Positions 13,464-17,100 of a DNA stretch of 64,000 bases are shown in pieces. The stretch comes from Octopus sinensis (lineage: Eukaryota). Position 1 is the first letter of the stretch, and every line of letters begins with the position of its first letter. Both the position numbers and the translations under genes were made by a program. The stretch is from assembly GCF_006345805.1 (NCBI RefSeq), contig NC_043006.1:105338001-105402000 (forward strand), given 5' to 3'. Under the pieces are notes generated by a model, which made no database searches, was not told where the DNA came from, and saw only the letters and a program-made list of their open reading frames with translations.

Positions 13464-13789
13464 CTACAATAATAAAGAAAAACAGATATTAATATTCATT
13501 TACAATTAATATACATACATAAATACACATCTGTGTGTGTGTGTCTGTGTGTGTGTGTGTGTGTGAAGGAACAACATTATGTCGTTTCGGTATGGATATA
13601 GGCCACCACAGGCCACCAGCTAGAATCGACAAAAGGAAGTTCGAAATATTGAAGACTTAAAAGCAAGGGCATTTCAGTAATAAGAGAAAGAAAAACTAGT
13701 CTTTTCATCATTGGCAAAATAAAAAAAATTGTATAATGCTTGTGTATGAAACTCGAGTTGGTGTTTAACACTTAAGTTATTGTAGTGTG

Positions 13790-13824
<35 letters not shown>

Positions 13825-13854
13825 GGATTAGCTCGTATACGAGTAGGTATATAT

Positions 13855-14078
13855 TTGTAAAAAATGAAGTTCGAAAATGCTGCTGCTATTTATACCAATT
13901 TTTAATTTCTATATTTCATTATAACATGTTTCAGTTCCTGAAATGAACCTTATCAAAAAAAGTTATATATAGCTCATGCCGTCAAACACAAGAAATCATT
14001 TATAATATACAACGGAGTCAGACATCATTAAAGTTCAAATATAGTTTGAAGTAATTTTCGAACTTCATTTTTTACAAA
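13855..14078. repeat. Small element with 23 bp terminal inverted repeats, adjacent to the array
   Basis: tgtaaaaaatgaagttcgaaaat (13857-79) and attttcgaacttcattttttaca (14054-76). Confidence 0.7.
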
Positions 14079-14114
14079 TTATATTATATATATATATTAT
14101 ATATATATATATAT

Positions 14115-17100
14115 ATATTGTATAGAGGGCATTATTACACATAAATGCCTCACACTAGGGGACAGAGTCATTACTACCAAAATTATACTAATCATAACCC
14201 AAATGCCAGTTTTTTCAAAGCAAGACATTTAAAAATGAATTATGTTCTGTATCACCGTGATTCACATACAACTTGCGTCTACTGATCGTCAGCAGAACTG
14301 ATTCTGAATACATCTAAATAAACTAAACCTTATTACGTAGCGAAGACAACCGACAACTGCTCCTCCGGCCAAGCCACACATGGAATGTTTATAAATCATA
14401 TATCCGGTAAATGCGGGCTTTTTACGACGAACTGCATGTCGGGTAATGAAAAGTATTTCGGATAAAGTTTAACAATTAAGATAATCTCTTAATAAGGGAT
14501 CTTAACAGAAATTATCAGGTAGCTAGCGTGAAAACCTCATAAAAGAAAAGATCCGAAAATAATTTTTTTCTTCTGAACAAATAATTATATCTATATTGAA
14601 TAGAGGGCATTATTACACATAATGCCTCACACTAGGAGGGACAGAGTCATTACTACCAAAATTATACTAATCATACCAAATGCAGTTTTTCAAAGCAAGA
14701 CATTAAAAATGAATTATGTTCTGTATCACCGTGATTTCACATACAACTTGCGTCTAATGATCGTCAGCAGAACTGATTCTGAATACATCATAAATAAACT
14801 AACCTTACGTAGCGAGACGAACAGACAACTGCTCTCTCCGGCCAAGCACATGGAATGTTTATAAATCATATATCCGGTAAATGGCGGGCTTTTTACGAAC
14901 TGCATGTCGGGTAATGAAAAGTATTTCGGAATAAGTTTAACAATTAAGGATAATCTCTTAATAAGGATCTTAACAAGAATTATCAGGTAGCTAGCGTGAA
15001 AACCTCATAAAAGAAAAGAATCCGAAAATAATTTTTTTTCTTCTGAACAAATTAATTATATCTATATTGTATAAAGGGCATTATTACACATAAATGCCTC
15101 ACACTAGGAGGGACAGAGTCATTACTACCAAAATTATACTAATCATACCCAAATGCAGTTTTTCAAAGCAAGACATTTAAAAAGGATTATGTTCTGTATC
15201 ACCGTGATTTCACATACAACTGCGTCTAATGATCGTCAGCAGAACTGATTCTGAATACATCATAAATAAACTAACCTTACGTAGCGAAGACGAACAGACA
15301 ACCTCTCTCCGGCCAAGCACATGGAATGTTTATAAATCATATATCCGGTAAATGGCGGGCTTTTTACGAACTGCATGTCGGGTAATGAAAAGTATTTCGG
15401 AATAAGTTTAACAATTAAGGATAATCTCTTAAAGGGATCTTAACAAGAATTATCGGGTAGCTAGCGTGAAAACCTCAATAAAAGAAAAGAATCCGAAAAT
15501 AATTTTTTTCTTCTGACAAATTAATTATATCTATTTGTATAAGGGCATTATTACACATAAATGCCTCACACTAGGAGGGACAAGTCATTACTACCAAAAT
15601 TATACTAATCATACCCAAATGCAGTTTTTCAAAGCAAGACATTTAAAAATGAATATGTTCTGTATCACCGTGATTTCACATACAACTTGCGTCTAATGAT
15701 CGTCAGCAGAACTGATTCTGAATACATCATATAAACTAACCTTACGTAGCGAAGACGAACAGACAACTGCTCTCTCCGGCCAAGCACATGGAATGTTTAT
15801 AAATCATATATCCGGTAATGGCGGGCTTTTTACGAACTGCATGTCGGTAATGAAAAGTATTTCGGAATAAGTTAAACAATTAAGGATAATCTCTTAATAA
15901 GGGATCTTAACAAGAAATTATCAGGTAGCTAGCGTGAAAACCTCATAAAAGAAAAGAATCCGAAAATAATTTTTTTCTTCTGAACAATTAATTATATCTA
16001 TATTGTATAAGGGCATTATTACACATAAATGCCTCACACTAGGAGGGACAGAGTCATTACTACCAAAATTATACTAATCATACCCAATGCAGTTTTTCAA
16101 AGCAAGACATTTAAAAATGAATTATGTTCTGTATCACCGTGATTTCACATACAACTTGCGTCTAATGATCGTCAGCAGAACTGATTCTGAATACATCATA
16201 AATAAACTAACCTTATGTAGCGAAGACGAACAGACAACTGCTCTCTCCGGCCAAGCACATGAATGTTTATAATCATATATCCGGTAAATGGCGGGCTTTT
16301 TACGAACTGCATGTCGGGTAATGAAAAGTATTTCGGAATAAGTTTAACAATTAAGGATAATCTCTTAATAAGGGATCTTAACAAGAATTATCGGGTAGCT
16401 AGCGTGAAAACCTCATAAAAGAAAAGAATCCGAAAATAATTTTTTTTCTTTTGAACAAATTATTATATCTATATTGTATAGAGGGCATTATTACACATAA
16501 GCCTCACACACTAGGAGGGACAGAGTCATTACTACCAAAATTATACTAATCATACCCAAATGCAGTTTTTCAAAGCAGACATTTAAAAATGCTAGTACCT
16601 ATAATTTCTGTTAAGATCCCTTATTAAGAGATATCCTTAATTGTTAAACTTATTCCGAAATACTTTTCATTACCCGACATGGCGTCGTAAAAAGCCCGCC
16701 ATTACCGGATATATGATTTAATAAACATTCATTGTCTTGGCCGAGAGAGCAGTTGTCTGTTCGATTCGCTACGTAAGGTAGTTTATTTAGATGTATTCAG
16801 ATCCGTTTGCTGACGATCATTAGACGCAAGTTGTATTGAAATCACGGTGGATACAGACATAATTCATTTTTAAATGTCTTGCTTTGAAAACTGCATTGGG
16901 TAATGATTAGTATAATTTTGGTAGTATGACTCTGTCCCTCCTAGTGTGAGGCATTTATGTGTAATATGCCCCTCTATACAATAATAATAAATTAATTTGT
17001 TCAGAAGAAAAAAATTATTTTCGGATTCTTTTCTTATGAGGTTTTCACGCTAGCTACCTGATAATTTCTTGTTAAGATCCCTTATTAAGAGATTATCCTT

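What the first reader, a model, noticed from the sequence alone, without database searches (positions are those of the whole stretch)
13464..16591. Five hammerheads lie in the sense of the Uncx pre-mRNA, ~0.8-2.7 kb upstream of its last splice acceptor
Seen: the Uncx exon is on the minus strand and starts mid-homeodomain at an AG acceptor (13464-65), so the sequence to its right must be intron. The left arm of the array has its ribozymes on the minus strand (14244, 14718, 15191, 15657, 16126). Inference: nascent Uncx transcripts could be cut co-transcriptionally before the last exon is spliced. That could lower expression, require splicing across a broken intron, or release retrozyme monomers in Uncx-expressing neurons. 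Minus-strand hammerheads at 31372 and 43255 would also be sense if the intron reaches that far.
Basis: inference. Interest (0 to 1): 0.8.

Follow-up and report, generated by a model that had tools for sequence, protein, structure and literature searches.

The report
Hammerhead-type repeat array in octopus Uncx intron
A 7-kb block of a 476-base repeat, each unit carrying a hammerhead-like self-cutting RNA motif, lies in a very long intron of the octopus Uncx (unc-4) gene; it looks like an ordinary selfish "retrozyme" repeat, and nothing shows that it controls the gene.

Summary
The observation mostly holds. An unc-4/Uncx exon on the minus strand starts mid-homeodomain at 13463, behind an AG acceptor. 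A 476-bp repeat forms two head-to-head arrays: 14108-16590 (5.3 units, motif on the minus strand) and 16591-21359 (10.1 units, motif on the plus strand). Each unit carries a type I hammerhead-like motif with every core base canonical. Helix I has 6 bp, helix III 4 bp, and helix II starts with a U·U mismatch.

A descriptor that accepts this motif expects 0.005 chance hits per window. The monomer folds unusually well, and more so on the motif strand. No Rfam hammerhead model matches it, and cleavage is untested.

Unit size, low GC, tandem layout and strong self-pairing fit the metazoan non-LTR retrozymes.

The upstream homeodomain exon is not in the window, so the intron exceeds 50 kb and contains both arms. 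One arm is therefore sense to any transcript that crosses the array. In the pre-mRNA the antisense arm is made first, and the predicted fold buries the sense hammerheads in a long duplex. The motif also looks slow.

Regulation of Uncx is not excluded but has no support. The 31372 site is not a hammerhead, and 43255 fits chance. I file this as a new member of a known kind.

The parts
12831..13463 (-). unc-4/Uncx exon encoding homeodomain helix 3 and the C-terminal region. The open frame continues to a stop near 12462 if the donor at 12825-12830 is not used.
   Evidence: Translation. Identical to O. vulgaris unc-4 homolog P0001 up to ...GEIIDI. The GTGAGT donor was read.
13464..13465 (-). AG splice acceptor preceded by a pyrimidine-rich tract, at the conserved mid-homeodomain intron position (ESRVQ|VWFQ).
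11207..11248 (-). Further 3' exon (HYFETSQILWTFW*) used in the O. vulgaris gene model. Because of it, the acceptor at 13464 is not necessarily the last one.
   Evidence: exact match to the C-terminus of P0001
14108..16590 (-). Left arm: 5.3 units of the 476-bp repeat with the motif strand on the minus strand, the same sense as Uncx. Its outer end abuts a (TA)n tract.
16591..21359 (+). Right arm: 10.1 units of the same repeat with the motif strand on the plus strand, antisense to Uncx. Its outer end abuts a (TA)n tract. The arm consensuses show no fixed substitution differences.
16126..16181 (-). Hammerhead-like motif, intact: GUUCUG-CUGACGA-helix II-GAAA-UCACGGUGA-UA^CAGAAC. Predicted cut between 16132 and 16131.
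15657..15712 (-). Hammerhead-like motif, intact. Predicted cut between 15663 and 15662.
15191..15245 (-). Hammerhead-like motif. The core is intact and loop 2 is one base shorter as assembled. Predicted cut between 15197 and 15196.
14718..14773 (-). Hammerhead-like motif, intact. Predicted cut between 14724 and 14723.
14244..14298 (-). Hammerhead-like motif with one A missing from the GAAA box as assembled (GUGAAUCAC). It fails the descriptor. This is either a dead copy or a consensus error.
43255..43297 (-). Isolated minimal hammerhead-like match: CCAC-CUGAAGA-UUGUC..GACAA-GAAA-CAAUUG-UA-GUGG. Helix III is 2 bp with a palindromic tetraloop. Compatible with chance.
   Evidence: No Rfam hit.

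Best explanation
The array is a young or homogenised block of a 476-bp non-LTR-retrozyme-like repeat from an octopus genome. Each unit encodes a type I hammerhead-like motif and a strongly self-paired RNA on the same strand. Two arrays of this repeat lie head to head inside an intron of more than 50 kb of the unc-4/Uncx gene.

It is best read as a selfish repeat that happens to sit in an intron, not as a regulator of Uncx. When Uncx is transcribed, the polymerase first copies the ten antisense units and then the five sense units. The most stable outcome is a long intramolecular duplex of about 2.3 kb that hides the sense hammerheads.

Any hammerhead folding has to win a kinetic race against that duplex. 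The motif also looks slow: it has a U·U at the base of helix II and a 4-bp helix III that would work better as a double hammerhead between neighbouring units. Cuts, if they occur, are more likely in the excised intron than before splicing, and would release monomers of about 470 nt.

Shown here: the anatomy, the strand, the chance level, the RNA fold statistics and the absence of the upstream exon. Inferred: catalytic activity, retrozyme life cycle, duplex formation in vivo and lack of effect on Uncx.
For: Hammerhead-like motif:
- There are 15 units of a 476-nt consensus with 34% GC.
- The motif has C3 U4 G5 A6 N7 G8 A9, G12 A13 A14, A15.1-U16.1 and A17. Helix I is 6 bp, and a further GAAU/AUUC pairing lies beyond an internal loop.
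- The descriptor expects 0.005 chance hits per window.
- The hammerhead secondary structure is -9.0 kcal/mol, within 1.6 of the motif's minimum free energy.
- Two copies co-fold into a double hammerhead with an extended helix III: -32.3 kcal/mol against 2 x -10.6.

Monomer fold:
- The monomer folds at -128.2 kcal/mol, z = -5.9 or -5.3.
- The antisense strand reaches only -97.2, z = -2.7. The asymmetry exceeds all 200 shuffles.

Fit to published retrozymes:
- The defining features are tandem units of 150-450 bp, GC below 45%, a type I hammerhead and highly self-paired RNA (PMC7229834).
- That paper describes a U·U at the base of helix II in axolotl HHR_Amex2, with weak monomer and better dimer cleavage.

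Context and duplex:
- The hairpin across the junction is -710 kcal/mol.
- The array is not at this position in another cephalopod.
Against: - No Rfam hammerhead model matches, even on an 81-nt slice.
- The motif alone is not unusually stable (z = +0.4 to +0.6).
- The 10.1-11.1 position is a mismatch instead of the usual G-C pair.
- No second locus or species copy was reachable, so there is no covariation support.
- The 476-bp unit is slightly above the published 150-450 bp range.
- There are no expression or cleavage data.
- Folding predictions are at equilibrium and ignore co-transcriptional kinetics and RNA-binding proteins.
Confidence: 0.55

Rival explanations
1. One reading: the sense-arm hammerheads cut nascent Uncx pre-mRNA before the downstream exon is spliced. 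This would lower or tune Uncx output, as the intronic CPEB3 ribozyme does for its gene, or couple retrozyme release to Uncx-expressing neurons.
For: - Four intact motifs are in the Uncx sense, 1.3-2.7 kb upstream of the acceptor.
- There is a precedent: an intronic ribozyme competes with splicing and lowers expression (PMC10919898).
- Type I hammerheads are conserved in amniote introns (PMC6155905).
- Retrozymes are depleted from introns in Xenopus, which suggests a cost (bioRxiv 10.64898/2026.07.22.740005).
Against: - The antisense arm is transcribed first and is predicted to sequester the motifs.
- The motif features point to slow cleavage, by analogy to HHR_Amex2 at 22% per hour (PMC7229834).
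- The distance to the acceptor is 4-12 times shorter than the 9.9 kb of CPEB3, so there is less time to cut.
- Slow intronic ribozymes left splicing unaffected (Fong et al. 2009, as cited in PMC10919898).
- The array is not conserved at this position in another cephalopod.
- With an inverted array, sense orientation is automatic.
Confidence: 0.12
2. The repeat is an ordinary satellite, and the hammerhead-like motif is a chance match amplified 15 times by tandem duplication. No catalysis occurs.
For: - All Rfam hammerhead models are negative.
- There is a U·U where G-C is nearly universal, and helix II contains internal mismatches.
- The motif fold is not unusual.
- All copies descend from one founder, so 15 copies count as one event.
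- The window was chosen by a reader who was looking for such motifs.
Against: - The chance expectation is 0.005 per window, about 4e-5 per 476-bp unit.
- Beyond the descriptor, helix I extends past an internal loop.
- The monomer structure is strongly and strand-specifically stable on the motif strand.
- Unit size and GC content fit the retrozyme class (PMC7229834).
Confidence: 0.25
3. The head-to-head arrangement, or the placement of the array in this intron, is an assembly artefact of noisy long reads over a repeat.
For: - Copies differ mainly by single-base deletions: 104 deletions, 40 insertions and 72 substitutions. Of the deletions, 67% fall in homopolymer runs, against 49% expected.
- The two units next to the junction are the most degenerate.
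- The arms have the same consensus.
- The window holds a 100-N scaffold gap.
Against: - The junction is not a perfect palindrome. The left arm ends at about unit position 13, and the right arm begins roughly 200 nt further along the unit (about 263 nt before its first cleavage site). This is not what a fold-back chimeric read gives.
- Both outer ends join unique flanking sequence through (TA)n tracts.
- The neighbouring exon is read without frame errors.
Confidence: 0.15

Closest known systems
Metazoan non-LTR retrozymes: tandem repeats with type I hammerheads in coral, mussel, axolotl and newt satellite 2 (Cervera & de la Peña 2020, PMC7229834)
   Same: Tandem units of a few hundred bp, with low GC and one type I hammerhead-like motif per unit. 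The monomer RNA is highly self-paired. The weak helix III suits a double hammerhead, and the U·U at the base of helix II matches axolotl HHR_Amex2.
   Different: - The 476-bp unit is slightly longer than the reported 150-450 bp.
- Helix II is long (22 nt) with internal mismatches.
- Rfam models do not recognise the motif.
- Two arrays lie in inverted orientation.
- Cephalopods are not mentioned in the two retrozyme papers I searched.
- Cleavage and circular RNA are untested.
Conserved intronic type I hammerheads of amniotes, in RECK, CTCL and DTNB (reviewed in PMC6155905)
   Same: A type I hammerhead in the sense strand of an intron of a protein-coding gene.
   Different: Those are single copies, conserved at orthologous positions across classes, with canonical helices and loop contacts. 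Here there is a multi-copy repeat that is absent at the same position in another cephalopod.
CPEB3 intronic HDV-like ribozyme (PMC10919898)
   Different: It belongs to a different ribozyme class. It is a single conserved copy 9.9 kb from the next exon, with a measured half-life matched to that distance. Nothing of this kind is measured here.
Penelope-like element minimal hammerheads
   Same: The isolated match at 43255-43297 has the minimal look (2-bp helix III with a palindromic loop). Weak GIY-YIG-like fragments occur in the window.
   Different: There is no adjacent tandem second copy and no reverse transcriptase reading frame next to it. The match is within chance.

Membership tests
Hammerhead ribozyme, type I | Conserved core: C3 U4 G5 A6 N7 G8 A9, G12 A13 A14, A15.1-U16.1, H17 | tested here: met
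   CUGACGA ... GAAA ... U-A^C is present in 11-12 of 15 units. The 14244 copy lacks one A as assembled.
Hammerhead ribozyme, type I | Three helices around the core, with helix I open-ended | tested here: inconclusive
   Helix I is 6 bp, with 4 more beyond an internal loop. Helix III is 4 bp with a triloop. Helix II begins with U·U in place of G10.1-C11.1, then has 3 bp, a 2x2 mismatch, 3 bp and a GCAA loop. The axolotl HHR_Amex2 is a precedent for a U·U at the base of helix II (PMC7229834).
Hammerhead ribozyme, type I | Match to the curated covariance models (Rfam Hammerhead_1 and relatives) | tested here: not met
   No hammerhead family appears at the gathering score or at E<=10, even on an 81-nt slice.
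Hammerhead ribozyme, type I | Site-specific self-cleavage | not testable with these tools
   Needs in vitro transcription of monomer and dimer units.
Non-LTR retrozyme (metazoan) | Short tandem repeats (150-450 bp) in multiple copies, each with a type I hammerhead | tested here: met
   15 units of 476 bp, slightly above the range, with consecutive units carrying complete motifs. The motif's minimum free energy of -9.1 to -10.6 passes the -5 kcal/mol criterion of bioRxiv 10.64898/2026.07.22.740005.
Non-LTR retrozyme (metazoan) | Low GC content (<45%) | tested here: met
   34%
Non-LTR retrozyme (metazoan) | Monomer RNA highly self-paired | tested here: met
   -128.2 kcal/mol, z = -5.3 to -5.9. 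The fold is stronger on the motif strand than on the antisense strand, beyond all 200 shuffles.
Non-LTR retrozyme (metazoan) | Expressed as linear and circular monomer RNAs | not testable with these tools
   No transcriptome was reachable. The translated unit has no relatives in the protein collection, and the motif is absent from metagenome contigs.
Non-LTR retrozyme (metazoan) | Co-occurrence with Penelope-like elements in the genome | tested here: inconclusive
   Only sub-threshold GIY-YIG-like fragments were found, at 5513-6007 (17.5 bits against a cut-off of 22.6) and 58879-59331. No similarity to the unit exists elsewhere in the window.
Domesticated intronic ribozyme regulating its host gene | Conserved at the orthologous intron position in related species | tested here: not met
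   Another cephalopod contig (L001) has no such array in the 9.3 kb upstream of the same exon, and it aligns to the window only over the exon.
Domesticated intronic ribozyme regulating its host gene | Lies in an intron, in the sense of the host transcript | tested here: met
   Same strand as Uncx. The acceptor is at 13464-65, and no upstream exon is found up to 64000. The intron span beyond the window is inferred.

The most novel reading that the evidence does not exclude
Transcription of Uncx itself serves as the expression route of this retrozyme. In Uncx-expressing neurons the sense arm would be cut, in the nascent transcript or in the excised intron, into monomers of about 470 nt that circularise. 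The inverted arm would make a long duplex that is edited or diced. Uncx output and retrozyme RNA levels would then be coupled in a cell-type-specific way.
Probability: 0.1. Interest if true: 0.55.

Novelty: new member of a known kind. Interest (0 to 1): 0.3.

Why it matters
If the motif is active, this would extend the hammerhead-bearing tandem retroelements of animals to a cephalopod. It would also offer a natural test of what happens when such an array sits in both orientations inside the intron of a neuronal transcription factor gene. The competing processes would be ribozyme cleavage, splicing and long-duplex formation. Cephalopod nervous tissue is known for heavy RNA editing, but that link is my own inference from general knowledge and was not tested. 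As it stands, this is an annotation-level result. Intronic retrozymes are common, and intronic ribozyme effects on splicing have already been studied in other systems.

Tried and rejected
- Rfam searches at four scales found no hammerhead or any other ribozyme family in the array.
- The site at 31372 is rejected as a hammerhead because it has no CUGANGA box.
- The site at 43255 is kept only as a chance-level match.
- I looked for other copies of the unit in four ways: blastn of the consensus in the window (none outside the array), a protein search with the unit's longest reading frame (no candidates), an exact-pattern scan of metagenome contigs (none), and exact look-ups of the O. vulgaris protein and the window's own ORF (not on record). 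No covariation test was therefore possible.
- I searched for the upstream homeodomain exon with a vertebrate query and with the exact octopus sequence. It is absent from the window.
- A simple fold-back assembly artefact is unlikely because the junction phases differ.
- No tRNA-derived (SINE-like) origin is visible: there are no tRNA hits.
- Variation among copies could not be used as a conservation test, because it looks largely like consensus noise.
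Full report
**What is in the sequence.** The minus strand from 13463 downward reads VWFQNRRAKWRKKENTKKGPGRPAHN..., which is homeodomain helix 3 and the region after it. It is preceded by a pyrimidine-rich tract and an AG at 13464-65. A protein search gives the Octopus vulgaris unc-4 homolog as best hit. That protein is identical to the window across the ESRVQ|VWFQ junction and up to ...GEIIDI. It then uses a GTGAGT donor at 12825-12830 and a small terminal exon. 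That exon is encoded exactly at 11207-11248. The window is therefore octopus, very probably O. vulgaris. The acceptor is real, but it is not necessarily the gene's last one. The upstream half of the homeodomain is nowhere in the window, with either a vertebrate or the exact octopus query. The intron to the right of 13464 is thus longer than 50.5 kb, and it contains a 100-N scaffold gap at 38680-38779.

**The array.** Tandem Repeats Finder reports a 471-bp period at 14108-16591 (5.3 copies) and at 16591-21359 (10.1 copies) in the opposite orientation. An alignment of 13 full units gives a 476-nt consensus with 34% GC.

- The units differ mostly by single-base deletions. Two thirds of these fall in homopolymer runs. 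This looks largely like long-read consensus noise.
- The two arms have the same consensus.
- The junction is not a perfect palindrome, because the arms meet at different unit phases. This argues against a simple fold-back artefact.
- Both outer ends abut (TA)n tracts.
- No other copy of the unit exists in the window.

**Is the motif a hammerhead?** Every unit carries GAAU-CA-GUUCUG | CUGACGA | UCAUUAGAC-GCAA-GUUGUAUGU | GAAA | UCA-CGG-UGA | UA^CAGAAC-AUA-AUUC.

In favour:
- All core positions are canonical.
- Helix I has 6 bp, with 4 more beyond an internal loop. The full-monomer fold predicts this pairing.
- Helix III has 4 bp.
- A descriptor loose enough to accept the motif accepts 4 of 5 left-arm copies and 7-8 of 10 right-arm copies. 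It expects 0.005 hits per 64-kb window in simulated sequence, about 4e-5 per unit.
- The hammerhead secondary structure costs only 1.6 kcal/mol more than the motif's minimum free energy.
- Two copies co-fold into a classic double hammerhead with an extended helix III, as described for newt and axolotl ribozymes (PMC6155905, PMC7229834).

Against:
- Helix II starts with U·U where G-C is the rule.
- The isolated motif is not unusually stable.
- No Rfam hammerhead model matches at any scale, including an 81-nt slice.

A U·U at the base of helix II has a published precedent in axolotl HHR_Amex2. That ribozyme cleaves 22% in one hour as a monomer and much better as a dimer (PMC7229834).

**The monomer as an RNA.** The 476-nt unit, cut at the predicted site, folds at -128.2 kcal/mol with z = -5.9, or -5.3 in my own shuffles. 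The reverse strand reaches only -97.2, z = -2.7. The difference of -31 kcal/mol exceeds all 200 shuffles, whose mean difference is -13.7 with sd 6.2. The sense fold uses 18 G·U pairs and the antisense fold 5. This points to RNA-level structure on the motif strand.

The published description of metazoan non-LTR retrozymes lists tandem units of 150-450 bp, GC below 45%, a type I hammerhead per unit and highly self-paired monomers (PMC7229834). The array meets each of these apart from a slightly longer unit. I put the chance that this is a genuine hammerhead-derived retrozyme family at about 0.7. Activity is untested.

**Does it act on Uncx?** The left-arm motifs are in the Uncx sense, with predicted cuts 786-2668 nt upstream of the exon. 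Several points weigh against a regulatory role.

- With an inverted pair of arrays, one arm is sense to any transcript that crosses them.
- The polymerase transcribes the ten antisense units first.
- The predicted fold of the pre-mRNA across the junction is one long hairpin (-710 kcal/mol for 1.3 kb) that includes the first sense motif.
- The motif pairs with an antisense copy at -125 kcal/mol, against about -9 to -11 for its own fold.
- The motif's features suggest slow cleavage, and the distance to the acceptor is short. As PMC10919898 summarises Fong et al. 2009, fast intronic ribozymes abort splicing while slow ones have no effect. The CPEB3 ribozyme lies 9.9 kb from the next exon, with a matched half-life.
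- Another cephalopod contig carrying the same exon has no such array in the 9.3 kb upstream. The position is therefore not conserved.
- In Xenopus, 42-44% of retrozyme copies overlap introns, although they are depleted there relative to intron size (bioRxiv 10.64898/2026.07.22.740005).

An effect on Uncx is thus possible but unsupported. Cleavage in the excised intron, which would be harmless to the mRNA, is at least as likely. All of this paragraph's conclusions are inference from equilibrium folding and published kinetics.

**The other two sites.** The site at 31372 has no CUGANGA box and fails all descriptors. The site at 43255-43297 has a minimal hammerhead look, but it passes only a loose descriptor that expects 0.09 chance hits per window. 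It has no Rfam match.

**Verdict.** This is a real, well-defined repeat array with a plausible but atypical type I hammerhead, best filed as a new, cephalopod member of the non-LTR retrozyme kind. It lies in both orientations in a very long Uncx intron. The proposed regulation of Uncx is not supported by anything measurable here, and the antisense arm argues against it.

Noticed in passing
window 29666-29963 (+): A full-length metazoan signal recognition particle (7SL) RNA gene (246 bits, E = 1.6e-66). It lies inside the putative Uncx intron, on the strand opposite to Uncx.
   Followed up: no
window 13854-14078: A 225-bp element with perfect 25-nt terminal inverted repeats (tttgtaaaaaatgaagttcgaaaat / attttcgaacttcattttttacaaa). 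It is flanked by TA repeats and sits directly beside the left end of the array. It looks like a miniature inverted-repeat transposon.
   Followed up: partly
window 4462-4560: A nearly perfect 100-nt palindromic hairpin. It draws spurious microRNA-family matches on both strands.
   Followed up: no
window 38680-38779: A run of 100 N, which is a scaffold gap, inside the putative Uncx intron. The true intron length and content there are unknown.
   Followed up: no
window 612-1016 (+), 3148-3447 (-), 4120-4368 (-), 5303-5506 (-), 5513-6007 (+), 58879-59331 (-): Transposon debris downstream of Uncx and at the far end of the window. By eye, 3148-3447 and 4120-4368 look like mariner-type transposase fragments, and 612-1016 looks like a retroelement fragment. 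The reading frames at 5303-5506, 5513-6007 and 58879-59331 look GIY-YIG-like and may be Penelope-like element remnants. The only Pfam GIY-YIG match, on 5513-6007, is below threshold.
   Followed up: partly
window 12825-12830 and 11207-11248 (-): A GTGAGT donor inside the long reading frame, plus a small downstream exon, reproduce the C-terminus of the annotated O. vulgaris protein. Without that splice the frame reads on through threonine-, alanine- and serine-rich tracts to about 12462. Two alternative 3' ends of the gene are therefore possible.
   Followed up: partly
window 52440-52491: A short interstitial stretch of TTAGGG-like telomere repeats.
   Followed up: no
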